Assembly: GCA_038087875.1 (NCBI GenBank) | Contig: JAXLNO010002938.1 | Coordinates: forward strand, 620,001 to 684,000 | Reading direction: 5' to 3' | DNA: 64,000 bases | Origin: Malacoraja senta | Lineage: Eukaryota | Part shown: positions 3,569 through 31,045 of the stretch, piece after piece | How positions within the stretch are numbered: position 1 is the stretch's first letter | How the letters are laid out: the number at the start of each line of letters is the position of its first letter | Translations under genes and position numbers: made by a program | Notes under the pieces: generated by a model | Told to the model about the DNA's origin: nothing | The model's input: the letters and a program-made list of their open reading frames with translations, nothing else | Databases searched by the model: none

Positions 3569-3768
3569 NNNNNNNNNNNNNNNNNNNNNNNNNNNNNNNN
3601 NNNNNNNNNNNNNNNNNNNNNNNNNNNNNNNNNNNNNNNNNNNNNNNNNNNNNNNNNNNNNNNNNNNNNNNNNNNNNNNNNNNNNNNNNNNNNNNNNNNN
3701 NNNNNNNNNNNNNNNNNNNNNNNNNNNNNNNNNNNNNNNNNNNNNNNNNNNNNNNNNNNNNNNNNNNN
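3569..3768. other. Assembly gap (exactly 200 N, probably an unsized join)
   Basis: N run of round length, at the position where copy A alpha1 would be expected by analogy with copy B. Confidence 0.95.
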
Positions 3769-7354: not shown

Positions 7355-7515
7355 CGACACTGACCCTCACCCACACACTGACCCTCACCCACTGACACTG
7401 ACCCTCACCCAGACAGTGACCCTCACCCACACACTGACCCTAACCCACACACTGACCCTCACCCACACACTGACCCTCACCCACACACTGACCCTCACCC
7501 ACACACTGACCCTCA
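7355..7515. repeat. 18-bp minisatellite (ACTGACCCTCACCCACAC)n in class I intron 1, copy A
   Basis: About 9 tandem units directly visible. Confidence 0.95.
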
Positions 7516-7563
7516 GCCACTGTGGGGGACTGGGTTGCCAGCCCATCACTTCCCCTCACCCAC

Positions 7564-7630
7564 CTGCAGCCTGGGCTCCAGCCAGGAGGGCGGGCAGCAG
7601 CAGCAGCGGCAGCAGCAGCGGACACCACAT
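7564..7630 (-). CDS. MHC class I heavy chain exon 1 (signal peptide), gene A
   Basis: GCGACC-ATG context, encodes MWCPLLLPLLLLPALLAGAQAA+G, phase-1 donor CAG|GTGGGT. Paralogous to the gene B leader and preceded by an SXY promoter. Downstream exons are not visible. Confidence 0.85.
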
Positions 7631-7843
7631 GGTCGCCCCCGACTGTCCAGGTTGTGGTGAGTTTGCGAGTCCTGGGCGCATGCGCGGTTCACTCTGCTCC
7701 GCTCGCCCGCCCGCTTCACCCCCGCACCCCGCGCTGATTGGTCGGCGCCGTGTCCGCGGCCAATCACAGTCCTGCCCGCCCGTGAGTCACCGGTCTCCGG
7801 GCAGAACAGCCCCGAGAAGTTGGTGAAAAATAGCCCAGTCTGT

Positions 7844-7906
7844 CCAATCAGCGGCACAGCTGACGCCGCGTCACCGGTTGCCGGGTAGAGAAGAGCGCGG
7901 CAGGTT
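7844..7906 (-). promoter_or_regulatory. S-X1/X2-Y (enhanceosome) module, gene A
   Basis: Minus strand: AACCT (7902-7906), 16 nt, CCCGGCAACCGGTG (7872-7885) overlapping TGACGCG (7867-7873), 20 nt, CTGATTGG (7844-7851). Further CCAAT boxes, TGACTCA and GCGCATGCGC lie closer to the ATG. Confidence 0.85.
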
Positions 7907-7907
7907 A

Positions 7908-8839
7908 TCAAGTCAAGTCAAGAATCAAGAATCAAGTTTCCTTTATTGTCATTCAGACCTTTCGGTCTGAACGAAATTGTGATGCCTGCAGTCATACACA
8001 GAACCAATAATAACAAAACATACAATAAACACAAATTAAACATCCACCACAGTGAGTTCACCAAGCACACCCTCACTGTGATGGAGGCAAAGTCTTAGTC
8101 TCCGTCTCTTCCCTCCTTGTTCTCCCTCTGCGCTGAGGCGATCGATCCAGGCCGAAGATGCCGCCCTCCATTCCAGCGGACCTCCGTGGTGATGTCGCCG
8201 CCGCCGAAAGCCGGAACGCCGTCTCCGCTCCGAGACGGCCCGCCACAGCATGAGCCCCGGGTCCCGAAGTCTCCGCTCCGGGCCACCGCCCCAGCTCCAG
8301 GCCCCGTAGTCTCCGCTCCGGACCCCGCTGCACCAGCTCCAGGTCCCGCATTCTCCGCTCCGGACCCCGCTGTGTCAGCTCCAGGTCCGAAGTCTCCGCT
8401 CGGGCCACCGCCCCAGCTCCAGGCCCCGCAGTCTCCGCTCCGGACCCCGCTGTATCAGCTCCAGGTCCCGCAGTCTCCGCTCCGGACCCCGCTGTATCAG
8501 CTCCAGGTCCCGCAGTCTCCGCTCCGGACCCCGCTGTATCAGCTCCAGGTCCCGCAGTCTCCGCTCCGGACCCCGCTGTATCAGCTCCAGGTCCCGCAGT
8601 CTCCGCTCCGGACCCCGCTGTATCAGCTCCAGGTCCCGCAGTCTCCGCTCCGGACCCCGCTGTATCAGCTCCAGGTCCCGCAGTCTCCGCTCCGGACCCC
8701 GCTGCATCAGCTCCAGGCCCCGTAGTCTCCGCTCCGGACCCCGCTGTATCAGCTCCAGGTCCCGAAGTCTCCGCTCCGGACCCCGCTGCATCAGCCAGGC
8801 CGCCGCCGAAAGCCAGAACGCCGCACCAGCAAGTGTGTC
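7908..8839 (-). mobile_element. Non-autonomous retroelement with internal 42-bp VNTR and Rex1/L2-type 3' tail, inserted in promoter A
   Basis: 19-bp TSD AGAAGAGCGCGGCAGGTTA (7889-7907 and 8840-8858); absent from copy B; tail ATTTCGTT-stemloop-AATGACAATAAA-(CTTGATT/CTTGA)n. Confidence 0.85.
8293..8791. repeat. 42-bp GC-rich VNTR (CAGCTCCAGGTCCCGCAGTCTCCGCTCCGGACCCCGCTGTAT)n
   Basis: About 12 tandem units; these explain the QLQVPQSPLRTPLY and LIQRGPERRLRDLE repeat ORFs. Confidence 0.95.
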
Positions 8840-8864
8840 AGAAGAGCGCGGCAGGTTAGCTCAT

Positions 8865-8876
8865 GAAACCGAAAGT
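8865..8876. promoter_or_regulatory. ISRE/IRF element of gene A (displaced)
   Basis: GAAACCGAAAGT matches the IRF consensus GAAANNGAAA. It lies 958 nt from the first S box versus 7 nt in copy B. Confidence 0.75.
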
Positions 8877-9665
8877 GTGAAGCGGGAGAGAGAGGTGGGG
8901 CCCACCGACACAGACCCTGACACAGACCCTGACACAGACCCTGACACAGACCCTGACACAGACCCTGACACAGACCCTGACACACAGACCCTGACACACA
9001 GACCCTGACACAGACCCTGACACACAGACCCTGACACACAGACCCCGACACAGACCCTGCAACACAGACCCTGACACAGACCCTGACACAGACCCTGACA
9101 CACAGACCCTGACACACAGACCCTGACACAGACCCCGACACACAGACCCTGACACACAGACCCTGATACAGACCCTGACACAGACCCTGACACAGACCCT
9201 GACACACAGACCCTGACACACAGACCCTGGCACAGACCCCGACACACAGACCCTGACACACAGACCCTGATACAGACCCTGACACAGACCCTGACACAGA
9301 CCCTGACACAGACCCTGACACACAGACCCTGACACGCAGACCCTGACACAGACCCTGACACACATACCTTGACACAGACCCTGACACAGACCCTGACACA
9401 CAGACCCTGACACACAGACCCTGACACAGACCCTGACACACAGACCCTGACACACAGACCCCGACACAGACCCTGATACAGACCCTGACACAGACCCTGA
9501 CACAGACCCTGACACACAGACCCTGACACACAGACCCTGACACAGACCCCGACACACAGACCCTGACACACAGACCCTGATACAGACCCTGACACAGACC
9601 CTGACACAGACCCTGACACACAGACCCTGACACACAGACCCTGACACAGATCCTGACACACAGAG

Positions 9666-10437: not shown

Positions 10438-11113
10438 AGACCCTGATACAGACCCTGACACAGACCCTGACACAGACCCTGACACACAGACCCTGACACA
10501 GACCCTGACACAGACCCTGACACACAGACCCTGAGACAGACCCTGACACACAGACCCCGACACAGACCCTGACACACAGTCCCTGACACAGACCCTGACA
10601 CAGACCCTGACACACAGACCCTGACACAGACCCTGACACACAGACCCTGACACAGACCCTGACACACAGACCCAGACACACAGACCTTGACACACAGAAC
10701 CTGAGACACAGACCCTGACACAGACCCTGACACACAGACCCTGACACAGACCCTGACACAGACCCTGACACACAGACCCTGACACAGACCCTGGGGACAT
10801 GAACCCTGAGACACAGACCTTGAGACACAGACCCTGACACACAGATCCTGACACACAGACCCTGAGACACAGACCCTGAGACACAGACCCTGAGACACAG
10901 ATCCTGAGACACAGACCCTGAGACACAGACCCTGAGACACAGACCCAAGCAGAGGAAACAAACTGCAGAAGCACATTGACTGGTCGGGTGGCATCTGTGG
11001 AGGGAGAGGGATGGTTCATGTTCCGGGTCGCGGCCCTGCCTCGGGGGTTGAGGGGAGAGAGCCAGTACCACGAGGATAGACACAAAAAGCAGGTGTAACT
11101 CAGCGAGTCAGAC

Positions 11114-12941: not shown

Positions 12942-13145
12942 TGTAAAGAAGTGTTATCGACACATCGTTACTTAACTTCATTTATTCATACTGCAGCATT
13001 ACAGTAGGCACTAGCTGTACGTGGTCTATCACTGGAACTAGAGAGCGATATGTGGGTGGGGAGGTTGTAATTATACTTGTGATATGGGGAGTGGTTAGTA
13101 GTGATGAGGTAACTATATTAAAGGCACATGCATATCTCAACTACA
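12942..13145 (-). repeat. Gypsy 3' LTR (204 bp)
   Basis: 3 mismatches versus 17477-17680; preceded on the minus strand by the polypurine tract CCAAGGGGAAGGA. Confidence 0.97.
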
Positions 13146-13214
13146 TCCTTCCCCTTGGAAACGAAAGGCAAACACAATAGTGACAGGGCGACCACGTCTC
13201 ATGCGCTAGAACAG

Positions 13215-16200
13215 TTAAGCAAAGTCATCATATCGGACAGGCGGCTTGACAACACGTCCCGACCGGGTTCGCATCTCGCCATCCTCCCTTCCGGCAGGAA
13301 GAAGTGGCACAGGTGAGGACCGACGAAGTGGAACGGGGGAACCGGGAGGGGACGGAGAAGACAAGGGCAGAAAGGCAGGAGGAGATGAGGGTTCAGCAGC
13401 GGGTAGCGCGCGGGTAGGCGAGTGAGGACTAGCCGGAGAAGGATGGGGCGGAAGGAGAGGAGAGGGTAGAGATCGTGGCATGCGAGCGGGCAGAGCATCG
13501 CCCGGGTGCTGAAACTGCAGCGGGGGAGCAAAAGGATCGGCGGGAGGCGATCGCGGCTCATTGACGAGCCGCATGTGTTGGCGGGACCGGCGGTAAATGG
13601 TTCCCGCATGGTCGACGAGGTAGGACCTGGGCGACCCAGCAGAGGCGACGACGGTAGCGTGCTTGGAGTGACCGGAGGGGGTCTGCATGCGGACGACCTG
13701 TCCGGGGAAGAGGCGCGGCAGTGGGTGGCAGGACCTGTCATAGGAACGCTTCTGAACATCGTGCCTAAAGGCAATGCGTTCCTGAACAGCAGCAGGCTTG
13801 AGGACAGAGGGGATGAGGGAGCGATGGGTCACCGGGATCGGTCGTCTGGTAGCGCGAGACATGAGCCGCTGAGCAGGGGAGCCCATGTTAGGGTCGCGTG
13901 AGATGTTGCGGAGGTTGAGGGGGGCCAGATAGAAGTCCGAGTTGGACAAGCGACATTGTTCCAGCAACTTCTTTGCACTGCGGACGGCGCGCTCGGCCAG
14001 ACCGTTGCTTTGCGGGTACTCAGGGCTACTGGTGAAGTGGCGGAAGTTCCATCTGGATGCGAAAGCTTTAAACTCGGAGCTCGTGAATTGGCTGCCATTG
14101 TCCGACTGCAGGCTGGCCGGGGTGCCAAAAGTGCACAAAATGATGGCCCAACTTGTCGACAACGGCCGAGGGGGTGAGGGAGTGCAGATGGTCGACCTCG
14201 AACCAGCTGGAGTAGGAGTCGACGACGACCAGGAAGTGTTTGCCCCGCCACTCGAAAATGTAAACGGCAACCGCCATCCAGGGCAGTTCGGGGGCAGGCT
14301 GCTGCAGGAGAGGCTGACGTTGCTGGTGGGGGGGCGAGACTGTTGCAGGTGGAACACGAGGAGACCCTCTCCCGGATGTATTGAGCCATACCAGGCCAGT
14401 AGAAATGGCTCTGGGCGTGAGACAGGGTGGCTTCGGCCCCAGGATGACCGCGGTGAGCGACCTGAAAATAGTGGTCGTGCAGCGCAGCAGGCACGACAAC
14501 CTTGTGACCTTTCACCACCACGCCGTCGTGTAGTACGATCTCATCGCGTACCAGGAAGTAGGGCACGGCGCCAGCCGGCAAAGCGGAACGGCGGTCGGGC
14601 CAGCCCTGCTGGATGATGGCAGAAAGCTGTTGCAGGGCAGGATCATTGGCAGTGTGTTCAACCAGGGACTTCATCTGCTGTGAAGGGACAATGTTTACAT
14701 GGAGCACCAACAGGTCAGACATTTCATAGGGGTGGCGATCTGTGGATGTTAGCGGGGCGCGGGACAACGTGTCAGCCACGAACATGTCCTTGCCCTTATG
14801 ATAAACCACGTCAAAAGTGAAGCGCTGGAGCTGCAGCATCATGCGCTGCAGGCGGGATGAGGCAACATGGATCGATTTGTTGAGAATGGTGACAAGCGGC
14901 TGGTGATCAGTTTCAATGGTGAAAGTGTTGCCCAGGATGTAGTCCTTGAATTTGGAGCAGGCAAACACCACGGCCAGTAGCTCCTTCTCGATCTGCGCGT
15001 AGTGTTGTTCGGCAGCGGTCAAGGTGCGGGACGCGAAGGAGACAGGCAGCTGCAGGCCGTCATGGAGCTGTAGGCAAGCGGCACCGAGCCCGAACCGAGA
15101 GGCGTCGCAGGTGAGGATAATGGGACGCTGCAGGTCAAAAAACGTGAGTGTGGGGGTACTGATTAGCTTGGATTTAAGGATGTCGAAGGCTTTCTGGTGT
15201 TGGGGGGACCAAGCCCAGGCCGTGTCCTTCTTTATCAACTCCCTCAGGGGTGCGCTGAGCTCGCTGAGGTCGGGGATGAACTTCCCCAGGTAGTTTACCA
15301 TGCCTAGGAAGCGTTGCAGGCTGGGCACATCAGTTGGAGAAGACATCCCGGAGATGGCAGCCGTTTTCTGCGGGTCGGGTTTCAGCCCCGAGGCAGTGAA
15401 TACATGCCCAACATATGTGACCTCCGGGACGCGGAATCGGCACTTCTTGGGGTTCAGTTTCAAGTTGATTTGCCGTGCCCGGTCTAGGACTTGGCGGAGG
15501 TTGAAGTCGTGTTCGGCGACATCCTTACCGTAGACCAGGATGTCGTCAACGATGATGGCGCACGGTAGACCCGTAAACAGCTGCTCCATTGTCCGTTGGA
15601 ACACCTCGCTTGCAGAGTTGATTCCGAATGGCATTCGGAGGAACCGAAATCTGCCGAAAGGGGTGCTAAAAGTTGTCAAGATGGAGGACTGCTCGTCAAG
15701 CGGTATCTGCCAGAAGGAGCTCTTGGCATCGAGGACAGAAAAGATTGCGGCCGGACCAACCTGTGCAGCGACGTCCTCTACTGTTCTCATAGGATAGTGC
15801 GGGCGTTTAATGGCCAGGTTGAGGTCTTTGGGGTTGATGCAAATGCGTATTTCGCTTTTGTCCTTTTTCGCGGCAACAACCATGGTGGAGACCCACCTGG
15901 TGGGATCGCTGACCGCCTTTAGGATGCCCATTTTTACCATGCTGTGCAGCGTCGATTCTACTTTGTCCTTCATGGCGAAGGAGACACGGTGTGGCGCACG
16001 GACCACGGGCTCGACCTTGCGGTCGACTACAATCTTGTAGTTGCAGGGCAGCTTGCCCAGCTCGTCATCAAAGCAGTCAGGATATTCAGTCAACGGGTCC
16101 ACGAGGGCCCGCACCTGGTGGATGTCACGGTGGAAGGAGACCAGGCCCAAGTCCTGGCATGCTTCGGTGCCCAACAGGGTAATATATTTGCGATCGAGGA

Positions 16201-16660
16201 GATAGAAAGTGAGGGGCCGAGAGGTCTCCAGTGTTTTGCAGCGCAGAGTTGCCTTTCCCACAGGAATAAGAACTCCTCCCCCGTAAGCATGCAAAGTTGA
16301 GCTATCAGAAAAAACCTTCTCATTAGTCCTTATCTTTTTGAAGAGGCTTGTTGACATAACATTCGCAACAGCTCCGGTATCAATCTTAGCAGTGAAGGTC
16401 GAGTTGTTCACAGTTACTCGAACTGAAGGGTCTGTTATCACAGCAGGTGCATCCAACACAGAAAATAGGCTGGTCTCCCCCTGAGAGGAGCCAGATTCAG
16501 ACACAGACTGTTCGTCAAAATAGCACTGGGAGCTGAGCTCGCTAGCAGCTTGTACCAAGTTGTTTAAAATACACCTTGGAGCAGCAAAAGGCTTCCCACG
16601 GGAACGGCATGCCGCAGTAAAGTGATTGAGTTTCTTGCAGTTGTTGCAAGTTTTACCCAA
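13215..16660 (-). pseudogene. Gypsy gag-pol C-terminal part/pol (zinc knuckle, protease, RT, RNase H, integrase), frameshifted in integrase
   Basis: ORF 13829-16660 has CNNCKKLNHFTAAC, KIDTGA, IIVDDIL, CDAS, TDHQPL and HRGH...CSTC. Integrase core continues in other frames (VVVDSYS, SDNGSQF, PQSNGLAE) and ends TRSGRVVKPPVRYDDFA* at 13215. Confidence 0.93.
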
Positions 16661-16879
16661 AGCAGGGCATACATTGTATTGATGAGTGGCAAAGTTACAA
16701 TTGGGGCACCTTTGCCGGGCACGTCCCCCGGGTGCAGTGCCGGACCCCGGGGCGCGTCCCCCTGGAGCAGTGCCGGACCCCGGGGGTCGTGGCGGGGTCG
16801 TGTTCAGACGACGGCTGGTAGCGCTGGCAAAGTTAATGTCGTGATCAGCTGGTTACACCGCCGAGGTGACAGCTTCGGC

Positions 16880-17380
16880 TAAACGACAGGAGTGCATTGC
16901 CTCGTTAAAAGTCAGATCGGCCCTGCGCAAACGTTCAGCCCTTAGCTTTTCGTCGCGGAGACCGTAAACCAGAAGGTCCCTGGTCAGCTCCTCGGGGGTC
17001 AGCGTGTCCAGGCGGCACCGCCTGGCCAGTGTCGCAGCGCAGCGACATAGTTCTCTGCGGATTCGCCGGGGTTCTGCCGCCGCCCGAACAGTTTAAAACG
17101 TTCTAAAATGCAGTTTGATGGAATGTCGCAAATCGCGGTAAACTTAGCCAACAAACATACCGGGTCCCGAGCAGATTCACCCACAGCGTAGACGAAGAAG
17201 TCTGATCGAGCCAGGGCATCTGGACCAGCCAAGTTGAGAAGCAGAGATGCTTTAAGTTCTGGGGTGGCGGCAGGATGAGCAATAGTGACACAGTGGTCAC
17301 GTCTGAAAACATCCCATCGATGGGCCAATGTCAGAATCGAAAACGAGCATATCGGGCTTTCGGCAAGAAGTGGCCATCAC
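16880..17380 (-). pseudogene. Gypsy gag N-terminus (frameshifted)
   Basis: LKASLLLNLAGPDAL...ERFKLFGRRQNPGESAENYVAALR, near-identical to the gag starting at 63580. Confidence 0.85.
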
Positions 17381-17476
17381 GAGGAAATAAGAGGGTGGGG
17401 AGAACAGAAAAACTGGGACAAAAGTGAACTAAATCACCGATAAACAGGAGGCGCAAGGGTAAGGGGGCTGACACCA

Positions 17477-17680
17477 TGTAAAGAAGTGTTATCGACACAT
17501 CGTTACTTAACTTCATTTATTCATACTGCAGCATTACAGAAGGCACTAGCTGTACGTGGTCTATCACTGGAACTAGAGAGCGATATGTGGGTGGGGAGGT
17601 TGTAATTATACTTGTGATATGGGGAGTGGTTAGTAGTGATGAGGTAACTATATTAAAGGCACATGCATATATCATCTACA
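17477..17680 (-). repeat. Gypsy 5' LTR (204 bp)
   Basis: Matches 12942-13145; followed on the minus strand by the PBS. Confidence 0.97.
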
Positions 17681-17873
17681 ACAATGTTGCACCTTTACCA
17701 GTTTAATGACAGGGCAACAGGAACTGCACCAATGTCGTGTCACTAGTCGATAGGGTGGTGGTAAAGAATGTACTTTGTAGATTGGCCTTCATCAGTCAGC
17801 GTATTGAGTTTGGAAACTGGGAGATTACGTTGCAGTTGTGCAAGATGTTGGTGAGGCCACACTTGGAGTATTG

Positions 17874-20800
17874 TTTTTTTTTTTTTTTTTTTTATTTTTT
17901 TTTTTTTAGAAGTACGGTAGATTACAGTAATGTACAACACGTATATATTAATACATTTTTTGTACCGCTTCATTTTTTTTAAACTTTAAGAAAGAAAAAG
18001 AAAGAAGTAAGAAAAGTGAAGAAAGTGCGCAAAGGTTGTGAAGTGCAAAAGAGTGTTGGGAAAAGAAAGCCCCTTAGAGAAGAGGTTAGAGAAGGAAGTA
18101 AAGTTAGAAAATAGACCCTAGAAAAAAAAAGAGAAAGAAAGAAGGAACAATCGCTCTATTATAACTCTTATACTATACTTCATAGAGAAGGAACTACCAA
18201 CCAAGTCTGTTTTTATTTTACCTCCCATTACCAGGTCCAGATACCTTTTATTTATTTATTTGTTTTTCTAAATTACTATTGCACCTCATGCTTGTAATAG
18301 GTCCAAAAACGTAGACCACGTCTTTTGAAATTGATCTACTTTACCTACTAGGAGGAATCTCATCTCTTCCAGATGTAATGTTTCCAACATATTTGATGTC
18401 CACATTTTTATTGTTGGTGTGGGCGCATTTTTCCAGAATTTAAGTATAAGCTTTTTCCCATTATTAGCCCATAATTGAGTAAATTCTTCTGATACACGTT
18501 TAATTCAGGAATACCTTCCGATATTCCAAAAATAATCCATTCTGGTTTTGGTACCAGTTTTATTTTGATTAATTTTAGAAAAATATCAAATATTTCAAAC
18601 CAGAATTTTGGATTTTTGTACAAAAAACAAAAGAATGTGCTATGGTAGCTTCTTGACATATACATTTATCACAGATTGATGAGACGTTAGGAAAGATTTT
18701 ATTTAGTTTGGTTTTTGAATAATATAATCTATGTAATGTTTTAAATTGGATAAGCGTATGTCGTACGTTGATCGAGCATTTATGCACCTGTAATAAATGA
18801 TTATCCCAACTTTCTTTTGAAATTTTTATACCTAGATCTTGTTCCCAATCTCTTCTAATTCCATCTGTTGTGGGTATTTCTATATTTAAGATGATATTAT
18901 ATAAGTATGATATTAAATTAACTGATTCCGCCTTTGTCTTCATTGCTTCATCTAGTAAGTCGGAAGGCATATTATAATAATCTTTTGTGTGTGTTTTCAA
19001 ATAGTCACAGATTTGTATATATTTAAAATATTGATTATTTTTCAAATTATATTTCAGTTGTAGTTGTTGGAATGATAGTAATTTTTCTAATTCATACAGA
19101 TCTTCGAGCGTTTTTAATTCCCATTCTTTCCCATTGTATAAATGCTTTATCTATGATTGAAGGTTTAAACGATGGGTTATTGACTATTGGTATTAAGAGA
19201 GATAGGTTTCTTAATTTTAGATTCTGTTTTATTTGCTTCCATGTTCTAATAGTGCTATATATAATTGGATTTTTATTATAATTTTTATTATTCAAATTTA
19301 TTGGAGAGAGAATAATCGCTCCTATATTATTCGGGGAGCAATCCCCTTTTTCCATATAATCCAGTCCACCTGCTGGCAGAATTGTCCAGCAGGTGAATCA
19401 TATTTTTAATATTTACTGCCCAGTTATAATACATAAAGTTAGGGAGCGCTAGACCCCCCAAATCTTTTCGTTTGTTAAGGTGTGTTCTTTGTATTCTGTG
19501 GGATTTGTAATCCCATATAAAATTTGTAATGTCTGAGTCCAGTTTTTTGAAAAACTTTTTTGGGAGATATATAGGTATTGATTGAAATAGGTAAAGGATT
19601 TTGTGGTAAGAAAATCATTTTTATAGCATTTATCCTACCTATTAAGGACATCGGAAGTGTTTTCCAAAATTTAATCAGATTATTTAATTTCTTAAGTAGG
19701 GGATTATAATTAGCTTTAAACATATCATGGTAATTTCTAGTAATCTCAATTCCTAAATATTTGAATTTTTCCATAGCTATTTTAAAAGGGAATTTCCTGA
19801 GATGTGTTGAGTCTTTTGGTTTAATCGACATAATTTCACTTTGTTCCAATTTATTCTATATCCTGAAAAGGATCCAAAGTCCTCAATTAAGTTTAATATA
19901 TTTGGTATACTAATTTGTGGTTTTTGTGATGTACAGTAGTACATCATCAGCATATAGGGATAGTTTGTTGTTGAATATTTTGTGTATAACCGTGAATATT
20001 CGAGTGTGTTCTTATTTTTTCAGCAAGGGTTCAATTACCAAAGCAAATAACAGCGGTGATAGTGAACATCCTTGTCTGTTGCCCCTAGATAATTCGAATT
20101 TTGAAGATAATATATTATTAGTTAGTATTCTAGCCGTAGGTTTGTTATATAGTAGTTTTATCCATGCAATAAAGTTTTCTCCCAATTGAATTTTTGCAAT
20201 ACTTTGATCATATAGTCCCATTCTACTTGATCAAACGCTTTTTCTGCGTCCAGTGAGATGATAGCTAACTCTTCGTCATAAGATTTATATGAATGCATTA
20301 TGTTAAGCAAACGTCTCAAATTATTAAATGAGTGTCTCTTAGGTATAAATCCTGTTTGATCCTCATGTATTAGTCTACTAACATACTTGCTTAATCTATT
20401 GGCTAATGTTTTTGCTATTATTTTCTGATCCGTATTTAACAAAGCAATAGCTCTATATGATCCTGGGTCTTCTATATTTTTATCTTTTTTAAGTATTAAT
20501 ATGATCGTTGATTCCGCTAGTGTTTCAGGTAGGTTTTGCTCTTTATAAGCATATGTATACATTTTTGGTAATCGTGGAGTAACTATATCATAAAAAGATT
20601 TATAAAATTCATTACTGAATCCGTCTTGGTCCTGGTGTTTTTCCTTTTTATTTAAGTGTTTTTATTGTGTCTTCTATCTCCTTAGAAGTAATTTGTGCTC
20701 CCAGTTCCTCTTGTTCCCTGCGTTCTAATTGTGGTAGATTACAATTATCTAAAAATTCTGAGATTTTATTATTGTCTATTGACGTTTTAGATGTGTATAG

Positions 20801-23299
20801 ATTCTGGTAAAATTGAGCAAATCTTTTATTAATATCCTTGGGTAGTGTTAATACTTCCCCTCTATCTGATTTAATCTTTAATATTGCATTCTCTTTTTCC
20901 CGTTTTTTAAGTTGTCGTGCTAGAAGTTTGTGGGGTTTGTCCCCGAATTCGAAGTGTTCTTGTTTTGTGATTTGAAATAATGTTATAACTTTCTCTGACA
21001 GTAATTTATTTAACTGAAATTTCAGTAGTAGTATTTTATTATGTTTATCCATAGTTGGGTCTTTAGCATTATCTATATCTAACTGTTTATTTGATCTTCT
21101 AAGTGTCTTTGTTCATTCTTATTCTTTTTATTTTGATAGGCTTGAAATGAAATAATGACTCCTCTTATAGAATGCTTTGAAGGATTCCCATAATAGCGTG
21201 GGGGGATATCTCTGGTGTATCATTTAACTCAAAAAATAGATCCATCTGTTTTTTTAGATAGATACTCCCTTGAGGTTCTTTTAAAATTTGTGAGTTAAAC
21301 CTCCAGAACGGTTTATTCATAGACATTCCTTCTAGTTTTAGAACAAAAGTTAACGGAGAATGATCTGAGATCGCATTAATATGATATTTAGGATTCAGAG
21401 ATTGCGAAATTAATTTTGTATCCACTAGAAAATAGTCTATCCGTGAATATGTTTTGTGCACCATTGAATAAAAACGAGTAATCCCTTCCCGTCGGGTTTG
21501 CAATCCTCCATACATCTGTTATATTTGTGTTTTCCATATATGTGTGTAAGAGTTCACTGGTTTTAGATTTCGTCTGACCTTTTTGTTTTTGCATCGATTT
21601 ATCTAAATAAGGATCTAAAACACAATTAAAATCTCCTCCGATTATAACATTTTGATAATTAGATTCTGCAATTATATTCAGAATTTTATTAAAAAATTGA
21701 GGGTTATCAAAGTTGGCGCATATATATTTACCAGCGTAATTGGCATGTTATTGATCTCCCCTGCTACTATAAGATATCTCCCTTCCTTATCTAAAATAGT
21801 GTTCTTTGATTTAAATGGAATTCCTTTACGAATAATAATTGCAGTACCTCTAGATTTGGAGGTAAATGAAGAGTGAAATGTTTGGCCTATCCAGTTCGCC
21901 CTCAGTCTTGTCTGATCTTGCTGTTTAAGATGTGTTTCCTGTAGAAACGCTATGTCCGTGTGTATGATTTCAACTGAGCTAGTATCTTGCCCCTTTTAAT
22001 AGGTTCATTAATCCCCCTTATATTCCAACTACATAATGTGATTCCTCCTATTTTCTTTTGATTGTCGTCATGCATTTTTACCAATTTTAATGACCTTAAT
22101 TATTGTGGTGCATTCATACCTCCGGACTCTGGTTATTTTGGGAGTATTTCTATTATAGACTTCCTTGGTAGTTCTCCTGCGCGATTGTCCTTGAAGAAAA
22201 AAACACACAGATGTGACATATTGTGATTTAAAAAAAATATATATAAATCAAATAAATTTACGGTGTCTAAAATTTCAACACCGTAGTGAGTGGCCCACTC
22301 GTCTGTGGGGTACGACATCCATAACGCTTCCGGCGTAGTTGGTATAAAGTTAGCCCCGCTGTATTTATTACCCAAAATCTATGGGGTCATTACCGTTTCC
22401 AATTCAGTTCTATTTCACCCAGTTACAATTTATATATATGTCAAATGTATTCGATTCCATATCCTACTCACTCTTTATCTCTTAACTATTTTAAAATGAA
22501 TTTAGTATTGTTAAAGTGAGCGGTTTACTGAGTGGATTAACCGGAGTCAGGTTCCTGGAATTGTGCCAGGTGCCTGATCTCCTCTCCTCTCCACGAGCTG
22601 CGAACATAGGTGATAACTGCTGTCTGCGTTATAACGCAGGCACCACAGTTTTATCAGTTTCAAATATTATTTCTATATTAGTATTGTTAATTATTAATTA
22701 TGATTAATTCTCAGCATTTTGTAAAACTATATAAGCCGTATATATTTTTCATATCAACCTCGAGTGTATATTATCTCTTAACTATTTTAAATTGATTTTA
22801 ATATTGTTAAAAATGAGCTGTTCGCTGGAAGGGTTAACGGGAGTCTGGCTCCTGGAGTTATGCCAGGTACCCGGTCTCCCCCTCCCTCCACTCTCGAGCT
22901 GCATAGCACTTGCTGTTATCTGCTAAACAGAGCAGACTGCACATTTTTTATCTATTTCAATTGCTATTTCTATATTAGTATTGTTAATTGTTAATTATTA
23001 TTAGTTCTCAGTTTTTTCAGTTTTTTATAAACAATATAAGCCATGTGATGTTTTTCACTCTCAGCCCAGCAGTTCGTCCCGTTATCAGGTTTTCCTCGTT
23101 TGAGCACGTATTGTCCTTGAATTACATAGCACAATGTTCCAGCGAAGATAATAATGTCTAGCCACGTCTCACTAAGAATCTGTTGCTTGAAGTCAAATAA
23201 AAAATAAAAAATCAGTGTTCAGTTAATTCACTTTCCTTGTGATATTCTTGTTGGAAGAATAAGCAAGTTCGTTTGTTCATGTCGTCTTGGTTTTCAGTA
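17874..23299 (-). mobile_element. L1-clade LINE, 5'-truncated (~5.4 kb), with poly(A) tail
   Basis: Poly(T) on plus at 17874-17907; TSD TTGGAGTATTG (17863-17873 and 23300-23310); empty site in copy B at ~33593-33605. Confidence 0.93.
18286..22075 (-). pseudogene. L1 ORF2 (APE endonuclease + RT), multiply frameshifted
   Basis: SWNIRGI, FLQETHL, GGDFN, YSRIDYF and SDHSP endonuclease motifs; [33 protein letters not shown] and LYADD RT motifs; cysteine-rich C-terminus; stop at 18286. Confidence 0.92.
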
Positions 23300-24494: not shown

Positions 24495-24767
24495 CGGGGG
24501 TGAGTTGACACTGTCCGGCCTGGACATGTTTCCGCAGCCATTCGATGCACTCATCCTCCAGGTAGGCTTTGGCCCGATGGACCAGGCCCATGTTCCGGTC
24601 CCACTTGTGTTTGGTGAACAACCCCCAGGTGACGGGCGTCACCCACACCATGTGCTCCTTGTCGAAGCTGATGAAGTCCTCTCCGTCCCAGCCGAACTGC
24701 ATGAACCCGGCGGTGGAGCCGTCCGAGCGCAGCTCACAGCCGTACATCCGCTGGAGAGTGTGGATCC
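24495..24767 (-). CDS. MHC class I heavy chain exon 3 (alpha2 domain), gene B; cartilaginous-fish UAA-like
   Basis: TTGCAG| acceptor, 273 bp, G|GTGAGT donor, phase 1-1. Encodes GIHTLQRMYGCELRSDGSTAGFMQFGWDGEDFISFDKEHMVWVTPVTWGLFTKHKWDRNMGLVHRAKAYLEDECIEWLRKHVQAGQCQLTP, with C101/C164, T143, K146, W147 and Y159 equivalents. The UAA resemblance is from recall, not a search. Confidence 0.97.
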
Positions 24768-24869
24768 CTGCAACACACGGCCCTTAGTGGAGGCGCTGAT
24801 GCACCCCCACCCCCCCCCCCCACACACACACACACACACACACAAAACGTGGTACATCCCCGCTCTCAC

Positions 24870-25130
24870 CTCCGCTCTGGTTGGTTCGCTGCTGCAGGGT
24901 CTGGATGTTGCCCTTGAACTGCTGCTCGTTGTTCCGCTCGATCTCTGTCTGCCGCTCCCAGTAGTCAGCGCCCTGACTCTCCGCCATCCACCGCTGCCGC
25001 GGCTCAGCCCTCTGAGTCACGCTGTCGTAGTGAACAATCTGCTCCTCGTCCACGAATCCGACCGCCGTGAACTCAGGGACCCCCGAGCCCGCGGTCACCC
25101 CCGTGTAGAAATAACGCAGCGAGTGGGAGC
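24870..25130 (-). CDS. MHC class I heavy chain exon 2 (alpha1 domain), gene B
   Basis: TTCCAG| acceptor, 261 bp, G|GTGAGA donor. Encodes GSHSLRYFYTGVTAGSGVPEFTAVGFVDEEQIVHYDSVTQRAEPRQRWMAESQGADYWERQTEIERNNEQQFKGNIQTLQQRTNQSG, with Y7, Y59, R84 and the N86 NQS glycosylation site. A 102-bp intron separates it from alpha2. Confidence 0.97.
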
Positions 25131-25160
25131 CTGGAACCGGGAGCGGATTCAGAGACAGCG

Positions 25161-28358: not shown

Positions 28359-29159
28359 CAGTGTACAAGGATATATGTGAAACGGCCTTTAGGTATTTAT
28401 CTACCTTAATATGCCATAAAAAAATTTAAAAAAATAGAACGCAAAGTGCTTGAGTAACTCAGCAGATCAGGCAGCATCACCGGTGAATACGGATCGGTGA
28501 CGTTTTGGGTTGAGATCATTCTTCAGACTCTCCAGAAATGCTGCCTGACCTGCCAAGTTACTCCAGCACTTTATGTCCTCTTGTGTAATAACCAACCAGC
28601 ATCTACATTTCTTTCTGAAGAAGGGTTTCGGCCCGAAACGTTGCCTGTTTCCTTCGCTCCATAGATGCTGCTGCACCCGCTGAGTTTCTCCAGCATTTTT
28701 GTGTACCTTCTACATTTCTTTGTTTCTACTACTTAATATGCCATAAGACCAGCAGCACGGCCTCTTTTATAATGTGGATTCATTCCAAGCCATGGCTGTT
28801 CATTTCCTGTAATTCTTGGCTTCTATGACCTTCTGTACCGTAAATACAGTTGCAACCTCACCAATCTCCTGTGGATTCACACATAGACCAACATATTCGT
28901 CCTGCATAGATTCTAATCTCTCCATAATTACAATGTTGCTCTTTACGTAATTGTAGAAACTCTCAGGATACTCCTTTAATTTATCTGCCCAATCGATCAT
29001 CTCCCTTATTTACCCTCCTGATCTCCCTGGTTCAATGTACCAGGGTTATTATGCTGTGCCCAGCCCGACACTGACCCTCACCCACTGATTGGTGAACCCT
29101 GTGCCCATCTGCCCACTGACCCCCCTCATCCCCTGACCGGAACAAGGGGCCCAGCCCGA

Positions 29160-29990
29160 CAGTGACCCTCACCCACACACTGACCCTCACCCACTGATAC
29201 TGACCCTCACCCACACACTGACCCTCACCCACTGACACTGACCCTCACCCACACTGACCCTCACCCACACACTGACCCTCACCCACACACTGACCCTCAC
29301 CCACTGCACTGACCCACTGACACTGACCCTCACCCAATGACACTGACCCTCACCCACACACTGACCCTCACCCACACACTGACCCTCACCCACTGACACT
29401 GACCCTCACCCACACACTGACCCTCACCCACACACTGACCCTCACCCACACACTGACCCTCACCCACACACTGACCGTCACCCACTGACACTGACCCCCC
29501 CACCCACAGACATTGACCCTCACACACTGAGACTGATCCTGACCCACTGACACTGACCCTCACACATTGACACTGACCCTCACCCTCTGACCGTCACCCT
29601 CACCCACACACTGACCCTCACCCACACACTGACCCCACCCACTGACACTCACCCACACACTGACCCTCACCCACACACTGACCCCCACCCACTGACACTC
29701 ACCCACACACTGACACCCACCCACTCACTGACCCCCACCCACTGACCCTCACCCACACACTGACCCTCACCCACACACCGACCCTCACCCACACACTGAC
29801 CCTCACCCAATGACACTGACCCTCACACACTGATCCTCACCCACACACTGACCCTCGCACACTGACACTGACCCTCACCCACACACTGACCCTCACCCAC
29901 ACACTGACCCTCACCCACACACTGACCCTCACCCACTGACACTGACCCTCACACACACTGACCCTCCCCCACACACTGACCCTCGCCCAC
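29160..29990. repeat. 18-bp minisatellite (ACTGACCCTCACCCACAC)n in class I intron 1, copy B
   Basis: About 830 bp of tandem units with variants; much longer than in copy A. Confidence 0.95.
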
Positions 29991-30311: not shown

Positions 30312-30393
30312 CCAATCAGCAGCACAGCTGGCGCCGCGTCACCGGTTGCCGGGTAGAGTAGAGCGCAGCAGGTTGGCTCATGAAACCGAAAGT
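30312..30393 (-). promoter_or_regulatory. ISRE-S-X1/X2-Y promoter module, gene B
   Basis: ISRE GAAACCGAAAGT (30382-30393); S AACCT (30370-30374); 16 nt; X CCCGGCAACCGGTG (30340-30353); X2 TGACGCG (30335-30341); 20 nt; Y CTGATTGG (30312-30319). Confidence 0.88.
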
Positions 30394-30420: not shown

Positions 30421-31045
30421 ACCGACACAGACCCAGGGACACAGACCCTGACACAGAACCTGACACACAGACCCTGACACAGACTCTGACACACAGACCC
30501 TGACACACAGACCCTGACACACAGACCCTGACACAGACCCTGACACACAGACCCTGACACACAGACCCTGACACACAGACCCTGACACACACCCTGACAT
30601 ACAGACCCTGACACACAGACCCTGACACACACCCTGACACACAGACCCTGACACACACCCTGACACACAGACCCTGACACACACCCTGACACACAGACCC
30701 TGACACATACCCTGACACACAGACCCTGACACACACCCTGACACACAGACCCTGACACACACCCTGACACACAGACCCTGACAATCAGACCCTGACACAG
30801 ACCGTGACCCCGACACACAGACCCTGACACAGACCGTGACCCCGACACACAGACCCTGACACACAGACCCCGACACACAGACCCTGACACAGACCGTGAC
30901 CCCGACACACAGACCGTGACACACAGACCGTGACACAGAACCTGACCCTGACACACAAACCCTGACACACACACCCTGACACAGACCGTGACACACACAC
31001 CCTGAGACACAGACCCTGACACACACACCCTGAGACACAGACCTA
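30421..31045. repeat. 12/14-bp satellite upstream of promoter B
   Basis: GACACACAGACCCT / GACACACACCCT units; uninterrupted orthologue of the 8905-10950 arrays. Confidence 0.95.

What the first reader, a model, noticed from the sequence alone, without database searches (positions are those of the whole stretch)
7889..8876. Retroelement insertion splits promoter A, moving the ISRE about 950 bp away from the SXY module
Seen: in copy B the ISRE is 7 nt from the S box. In copy A a 932-bp element flanked by a 19-bp TSD (which duplicates the S box) sits between them, leaving S-X-Y spacing intact but the ISRE remote behind a GC-rich VNTR. Established: ISRE/IRF1 drives interferon induction of class I, and SXY drives NLRC5/RFX-dependent expression. 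Inference: gene or allele A may retain constitutive expression but have altered interferon inducibility, or be subject to TE methylation spreading.
Basis: partly seen in the sequence, partly recalled or inferred. Interest (0 to 1): 0.75.

Follow-up and report, generated by a model that had tools for sequence, protein, structure and literature searches.

The report
Retroposon splits skate MHC-I promoter
One of two tandem copies of a skate MHC class I promoter has a young 932-bp jumping element between its interferon-response site and its S-X-Y switch. The insertion is real, but it is an ordinary kind of event, and it is not known whether it changes expression or whether this copy is a whole gene.

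Summary
On the minus strand, copy A (ATG 7630-7628) carries a 932-bp insert (7908-8839) flanked by a perfect 19-bp target-site duplication (7889-7907 = 8840-8858). Paralog B (ATG 30097-30095, about 92% identical) and a Leucoraja erinacea class I gene (L002, about 87%) have the same site uninterrupted. The ISRE core (8865-8876) is therefore moved 951 bp from an intact S-X1-X2-Y block (7844-7907).

The insert lies in sense orientation. It has a 29-nt microsatellite tail, an 11-bp hairpin with a GAAA loop, a 42-bp x13 GC-rich VNTR, no tRNA head and no Pfam domain. Thousands of contigs from two skate species match it, many at 99% or more, so it belongs to a very abundant, recently active, LINE-dependent composite family. 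This scan noted "SVA-like" composites elsewhere in this genome (s1-207034, s1-187714).

The functional reading is untested and weakened:
- The window holds only copy A's leader exon; a gap and low-complexity DNA follow.
- No RNA run holds that exon.
- The insertion-bearing haplotype was not recovered in two same-species runs.
- A and B are tandem paralogs, not alleles.

Verdict: a new member of a known kind (a transposable element inserted in an MHC promoter), of modest interest.

The parts
7564..7630 (-). Copy A leader exon, coding part. ATG at 7630-7628; splice donor CAG|gtgggt after 7564; 22 codons + 1 nt.
   Evidence: The leader MWCPLLLPLLLLPALLAGAQAAG resembles skate class I leaders (P0186, P0203).
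7633..7843 (-). Copy A proximal promoter and 5' UTR. Contains an NRF1-like GCGCATGCGC (7676-7685), CCAAT boxes, and TGACTCA (7783-7789).
   Evidence: Conserved in B and in L. erinacea L002.
7844..7851 (-). Y box (CTGATTGG in gene orientation).
   Evidence: Conserved in B, L002 and L003.
7867..7885 (-). X1 (CCCGGCAACCGG, 7874-7885) directly followed by X2 (TGACGCG, 7867-7873).
   Evidence: Conserved in B, L002 and L003.
7889..7907 (-). Proximal copy of the 19-bp target-site duplication. It occupies the position of the S box.
7908..8839 (-). The 932-bp composite non-autonomous retroposon, in the same orientation as the gene.
7908..7936 (-). 3' microsatellite tail of the element ((ATTCTTG)2(ACTTG)2-like).
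   Evidence: Other copies carry other tail repeats (loose ends at 7938; the L003 copy).
7950..7973 (-). 3' hairpin of the element: 11-bp stem, GAAA loop, 13 nt before the tail repeats.
   Evidence: One compensated pair change in the L. erinacea copy.
8253..8795 (-). 42-bp x 13.1 GC-rich VNTR (GC 71%, CpG observed/expected 0.86).
8840..8858 (-). Distal copy of the target-site duplication, still next to the ISRE.
8865..8876 (-). ISRE core (ACTTTCGGTTTC in gene orientation), now 951 bp further from X1 than in copy B.
   Evidence: Conserved as ACTTTCGATTTC in L002.
30312..30393 (-). Copy B uninterrupted ISRE-S-X1-X2-Y module, showing the ancestral empty site.

Best explanation
After the tandem duplication that produced class I promoter copies A and B, a member of a very abundant, recently active retroposon family inserted in sense orientation into copy A. 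The family is LINE-dependent and has no ORF. Each element has a GC-rich 42-bp VNTR, an AT-rich 3' module with two hairpins, and a microsatellite tail. The insertion point is 6 bp downstream of the ISRE, at the 5' edge of the S-box region, and it produced a 19-bp target-site duplication.

Shown: the insertion; the ancestral contiguous ISRE-S-X1-X2-Y state; and the integrity of S-X-Y, the CCAAT boxes, the leader ORF and the splice donor in A.

Inferred: the ISRE and everything upstream are uncoupled by 951 bp, and about 740 bp of CpG-rich repeat (77 CpGs) now abut the S box. If copy A is a working gene, the RFX/NLRC5-type basal drive should persist while IRF-driven induction is weakened or made dependent on the chromatin state of the insert. 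I put that functional consequence at about one in three. It is equally likely that A is a decaying or incomplete paralog and the insertion has no effect.
For: - Perfect 19-bp duplication and an empty site in B. The empty site is also seen in L. erinacea L002 and in a contig from a second species (X3 joint 7907 to 8862).
- Retroposon hallmarks: a tail, a hairpin with a compensated change in an L. erinacea copy, no tRNA or Rfam hit, and no Pfam domain in its 254-aa open frame.
- Copy number: 3579, 2343 and 5367 contigs from three runs of two species were laid on this 1.37 kb. Summed contig depth on 7944-8173 is roughly 100 to 10,000 times that of the flanks. 1352, 875 and 1012 of these contigs are 99% or more alike.
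- ISRE, X1, X2 and Y are conserved between two skate genera.
- A's leader ORF and donor are intact.
- In mouse, S-X spacing of 16 bp and X-Y spacing of 20-22 bp, and the S box itself, are decisive for NLRC5 (PMC4374748).
Against: - There are no expression, methylation or binding data.
- Copy A has no alpha1, alpha2 or alpha3 exon in the window.
- No RNA run holds its exon 1.
- The insertion-bearing haplotype was not recovered in two same-species runs, so an individual-specific or even assembly-specific state is not excluded.
- IRF sites can act over about 1 kb in other genes (general knowledge).
- The partner LINE was not identified; no LINE in the window shares the 3' module.
Confidence: 0.85

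Rival explanations
1. The insertion is real but has no effect because copy A is a gene fragment or pseudogene (promoter plus leader exon only). It would be one of several decaying class I duplicates whose promoters collect transposable elements.
For: - tblastn with skate and shark class I proteins finds only B's alpha1 (25131-24868) and alpha2 (24768-24499). Nothing is found for A, and there is no alpha3/TM exon anywhere in the window.
- After the part of intron 1 that is homologous to B, A has a gap and 3.5 kb of low-complexity DNA where B has alpha1.
- No RNA run holds A's exon 1.
- An L. erinacea paralog annotated 'LOW QUALITY' (L003) has also lost S and the ISRE to transposable-element sequence that abuts X1.
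Against: - A's leader ORF, donor site and whole proximal promoter are intact and stay about 92% like B's.
- Intron 1 of the L. erinacea gene is 14 kb, so A's alpha1 exon may simply lie beyond the window's left edge or in the gap.
- A-type exon 1 is present with no differences in contigs from other runs.
Confidence: 0.4
2. The insertion is functionally neutral because the ISRE still works from 951 bp away, or because the CpG-rich insert stays unmethylated. Both copies would then be induced alike.
For: - The insert's GC-rich part has CpG observed/expected 0.93, like the promoter itself at 1.0. That fits a young or unmethylated state.
- Enhancer-type IRF sites act at a distance in many genes (general knowledge).
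Against: - In mammals the ISRE sits directly next to SXY. From memory (Gobin et al. 1997, not re-read here), the ISRE route needs the neighbouring site alpha/X2.
- The tight ISRE-S adjacency is kept in B, in L002 and in a contig of a second species.
Confidence: 0.25
3. The split promoter is an assembly artefact: a repeat copy was wrongly placed in a collapsed or duplicated MHC region.
For: - The window has five N gaps, and both class I copies are incomplete.
- No contig listed from the two same-species runs shows A-type letters at 7853/7863.
Against: - A misjoin would not create a perfect 19-bp duplication of exactly the empty-site sequence around a complete 3' end with tail.
- The contig tables are truncated and drop repeats, so a missing contig proves nothing.
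Confidence: 0.05

Closest known systems
Polymorphic SVA and Alu insertions in the human MHC class I region (PMC7848197; SVA as expression QTL, PMC11431313)
   Same: A LINE-mobilised, VNTR-bearing composite retroposon with a target-site duplication has inserted beside class I genes and may modulate expression.
   Different: The skate element shares no sequence parts with SVA: no CCCTCT repeat, Alu-like part, SINE-R or poly(A). It ends in a hairpin plus microsatellite, the stringent LINE type. It sits inside the core regulatory module, between the ISRE and S.
HLA-G promoter (PMC3987962 abstract)
   Same: A class I paralog whose promoter departs from the classical layout and lacks regulatory response elements found in classical class I promoters.
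   Different: From memory, HLA-G has a mutated or absent ISRE and enhancer A. Here the ISRE is intact but displaced by an insertion.
Chicken BF1 (minor) versus BF2 (major) class I genes (from memory, not checked here)
   Same: Tandem class I paralogs, one with a damaged upstream promoter and lower expression.
   Different: In the chicken the differences in expression are measured. Nothing is measured in the skate.
Leucoraja erinacea class I paralog P0208
   Same: X1-X2-Y are kept, but homology to the classical promoter ends about 1-24 nt upstream of X1, where retroposon tails abut. There is no ISRE within 10 kb.
   Different: In L003, S and the ISRE are gone or out of reach, and no target-site duplication is recognisable. 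In the window the event is clean and recent.

Membership tests
LINE-dependent non-autonomous retroposon | Target-site duplication and an empty site in a paralog or ortholog | tested here: met
   The 19/19 duplication, with a single copy in B and in L002.
LINE-dependent non-autonomous retroposon | 3' end with a stem-loop and short tandem-repeat tail | tested here: met
   Tail at 7908-7936 and an 11-bp stem at 7950-7973. The stem keeps pairing through a change on both sides in the L003 copy.
LINE-dependent non-autonomous retroposon | Many dispersed copies | tested here: met
   Thousands of contigs in two species, about a third of them 99% or more alike in the same-species runs. One copy in L003.
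LINE-dependent non-autonomous retroposon | No protein-coding capacity | tested here: met
   The only long open frame is the VNTR read-through, with no Pfam hit.
LINE-dependent non-autonomous retroposon | 3' module shared with an autonomous partner LINE | tested here: inconclusive
   No LINE in the window shares it. The whole genome could not be searched.
Canonical SINE | Pol III head derived from tRNA, 5S or 7SL | tested here: not met
   ARAGORN and Rfam find nothing in 7500-9000. This copy may be 5'-truncated.
Hominid SVA | CCCTCT repeat, Alu-like part, VNTR, SINE-R and poly(A) | tested here: not met
   Only a VNTR is shared in kind. The tail is a microsatellite, not poly(A). The two are analogous, not related.
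MHC class I ISRE-SXY promoter module | ISRE consensus GAAANNGAAA(C/G)T upstream of SXY | tested here: met
   8865-8876 and 30382-30393; 3 matches against 0.33 expected. Conserved in L002.
MHC class I ISRE-SXY promoter module | X1 (RFX half-site GCAAC) abutting X2 (TGACGCG), with an inverted CCAAT Y box about 20 bp downstream | tested here: met
   There are 18 nt between GACGCG and ATTGG. Conserved in B, L002 and L003.
MHC class I ISRE-SXY promoter module | S box about 16 bp upstream of X with the class-I-type sequence (PMC4374748) | tested here: inconclusive
   A conserved ACCTGC core lies 14-16 nt upstream of X1 in A, B and L002. No S-box matrix was available to score it.
MHC class I ISRE-SXY promoter module | Occupancy by IRF1, RFX, CREB, NF-Y and NLRC5 | not testable with these tools
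   Needs ChIP or a reporter assay.

The most novel reading that the evidence does not exclude
The insertion is a natural regulatory variant that separates interferon induction from constitutive SXY-driven expression in one of two tandem classical-type class I genes of a skate. That would be a transposable-element-made 'major/minor' class I pair in a cartilaginous fish. With the L. erinacea L003 case, it would point to the ISRE/S/X1 edge as a recurrent landing or decay point for class I paralogs.
Probability: 0.12. Interest if true: 0.55.

Novelty: new member of a known kind. Interest (0 to 1): 0.3.

Why it matters
If copy A is a working gene, the pair A/B is a ready-made natural experiment. 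It could show whether ISRE-SXY adjacency, kept from skates to mammals, is needed for interferon induction of class I. It could also show how transposable elements push class I duplicates towards different expression or towards decay. As it stands, it is a well-documented, recent insertion of an abundant skate retroposon. It is useful as a marker and as a clean full-structure copy of that family.

Tried and rejected
- Other copies of the insert in the window: none found.
- tRNA or Rfam head: none.
- RNA evidence for A's exon 1: only 2-word matches in unrelated organisms, probably the CAG/CTG run.
- Empty allele of A: the X1/X2 contig that joins 7891 to 8843 is the merged continuation of B-like contigs. 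It overlaps by k-1 the contigs that end at 7895 and carry B-like 7853A/7863G. It is therefore not evidence for an empty A allele, and polymorphism stays open.
- Deeper promoter comparison:
  - The Chiloscyllium locus L001 (P0020) and the Heptranchias locus L004 (P0195) show no recognisable ISRE/SXY just upstream of the annotated start. They may be non-orthologous or have an unannotated 5' exon, so they are uninformative.
  - P0028, P0001 and P0169 are not on record. P0021 was returned without DNA.
- NF-kB (enhancer A) reading of the palindrome GGTGGGGCCCACC (8894-8906): it does not fit GGGRNWYYCC and is poorly conserved in L002, so I dropped it.
- Half-ISRE (GGAAACT) in the retroposon tail region: a single half-site in the opposite orientation, so I did not pursue it.
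- CR1-type tail (ATTCTRTG-like): a resemblance recalled from memory. The paper I opened (PMC13343379) says nothing on tails, so this is left as a lead.

Full report
**What is there.** The class I sequences read on the minus strand. Copy A has its ATG at 7630-7628 and an intact 22-codon leader that ends at a CAG|gtgggt donor after 7564. Going upstream in gene orientation come:
- an NRF1-like palindrome, CCAAT boxes and a TGACTCA site;
- the Y box (7844-7851), X2 TGACGCG (7867-7873) and X1 CCCGGCAACCGG (7874-7885);
- the 19-mer 7889-7907;
- 932 bp of foreign sequence (7908-8839);
- the same 19-mer again (8840-8858);
- 6 nt further on, the ISRE core (8865-8876).

**The empty site.** Copy B (ATG 30097-30095) is 91.9% identical to A over 7357-7906 and 91.6% over 8840-9000. 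The two alignments overlap on one copy of the 19-mer, so B is the unoccupied site. A full-length class I gene of Leucoraja erinacea (P0187, locus L002) has the same promoter at about 87% identity, again uninterrupted. It has ACTTTCGATTTC (ISRE), a conserved ACCTGC core in the S position, X1, X2 and Y in the same register, and the same GACACAGACCCT minisatellite upstream. A contig from a second species (run X3) also joins 7907 to 8862. The contiguous ISRE-S-X-Y layout is ancestral, and the insertion came after the A/B duplication.

**What the insert is.** Read on the gene strand, it has these parts, 5' to 3':
- a GC-rich 5' part, with a 24-nt direct repeat at 8799-8822 and 8197-8220 bracketing a 42-bp x 13.1 VNTR (8253-8795);
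- an AT-rich 3' module of about 190 nt with two hairpins (8048-8080 and 7950-7973; the latter has an 11-bp stem and a GAAA loop);
- a 29-nt microsatellite tail (7908-7936).

It has no tRNA or Rfam match, and its only long open frame has no Pfam domain.

Contigs from four public runs were laid on 7530-8900. In total 3579, 2343 and 5367 contigs from three runs of two species were laid, together with 60 contigs from a run guessed to be RNA. On the insert, summed depth is roughly 100 to 10,000 times that of the flanks. In the three larger runs, 1352, 875 and 1012 contigs are 99% or more alike. Other copies carry different tail repeats. A 5'-truncated copy in L. erinacea (L003:7868-8062) keeps both hairpins, one with a compensated pair change.

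This is a very abundant, recently active, LINE-dependent composite retroposon. It is analogous to SVA in design but unrelated to it, and it is not a canonical SINE. First-stage notes elsewhere in this genome describe [quoted passage not shown]. I did not check whether that is the same family.

**Context that limits the functional claim.** tblastn with skate and shark class I proteins finds only B's alpha1 (25131-24868) and alpha2 (24768-24499). No alpha3 or TM exon is found anywhere in the window, and nothing beyond the leader is found for A. A's intron 1 is homologous to B's down to 4041. After that come a GT microsatellite, an N gap (3569-3768) and 3.5 kb of low-complexity DNA, where B has alpha1 right after its own gap. 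Because the L. erinacea gene has 14-kb introns 1 and 3, missing exons are not proof of a fragment. Even so, A's integrity is unknown.

No RNA run holds A's exon 1. In the two same-species runs, A-type exon 1 and proximal promoter are present (no differences over 7626-7748). From 7853 on, however, every listed contig carries B-like letters, and these contigs continue into an uninterrupted junction. So the insertion-bearing haplotype was not recovered there. The contig tables are truncated and repeat-filtered, so this neither proves polymorphism nor refutes the assembly.

**Mechanism.** Shown: sense-oriented retroposition with a 19-bp duplication; S-X-Y, the CCAAT boxes and the core promoter untouched; the ISRE and all upstream DNA moved 951 bp; and 77 CpGs (GC 70%, observed/expected 0.93) added next to S.

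Inferred from mammalian work:
- S-X-Y spacing and the S box decide NLRC5 recruitment (PMC4374748), so basal drive should survive.
- IRF-driven induction normally works from an ISRE directly next to SXY (PMC7281430). Its dependence on the neighbouring site alpha is recalled from memory.
- Induction may therefore be weakened, or depend on the chromatin state of the insert.

I give this about one chance in three. 'No effect because A is a decaying copy' has about the same odds.

**Comparison and novelty.** Transposable-element insertions that reshape class I regulation are known: SVA and Alu in the human MHC, the HLA-G promoter, and chicken BF1 (the last recalled from memory). This case is a clean new example in a cartilaginous fish, inside the core module. 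A second skate paralog (L003) has lost S and the ISRE to transposable elements that abut X1, which suggests this is a common fate of class I duplicates. Interest is modest unless expression data show a split between basal and induced expression.

Noticed in passing
L003:9700-9830 (Leucoraja erinacea, GCA_028641065.1 JAMYXN010000534.1): A second skate class I paralog (P0208, annotated LOW QUALITY) keeps X1-X2-Y. Its homology to the classical promoter stops just upstream of X1, where LINE and retroposon tails abut. No ISRE lies within 10 kb upstream.
   Followed up: partly
window 24499-25131 (-): Copy B has leader, alpha1 and alpha2 exons but no alpha3, TM or cytoplasmic exon anywhere in the window. 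Its alpha2 has His where the conserved groove Tyr171 stands (WLRKHV), as does a partial Rhinoraja longicauda protein (P0276).
   Followed up: partly
window 8907-9660, 10438-10946, 30424-31043; L002:8834-9660: A 12-14-bp GACACAGACCCT minisatellite lies directly upstream of the ISRE in both copies and in the L. erinacea gene. It is a conserved feature of these promoters, with unknown meaning.
   Followed up: no
window 7357-7520 vs 29159-29990: An 18-bp minisatellite starts about 45 nt into intron 1. It has 9 copies in A and 46 in B.
   Followed up: no
window 12947-17703 (-): An LTR retrotransposon lies between B's alpha2 exon and A's upstream region. It has a 1007-aa open pol frame (RT, RNase H, integrase zinc domain) and near-identical LTR-like ends at 12947-13177 and 17482-17703.
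   Followed up: partly
window 7853, 7863: The assembly's letters (G, A) are seen in none of the contigs from two same-species runs or one other-species run. All of those contigs carry A and G, as in copy B.
   Followed up: partly
window 18000-22400 (-): An AT-rich (about 30% GC) LINE with long open frames sits in what would be B's intron 3. I did not classify it.
   Followed up: no
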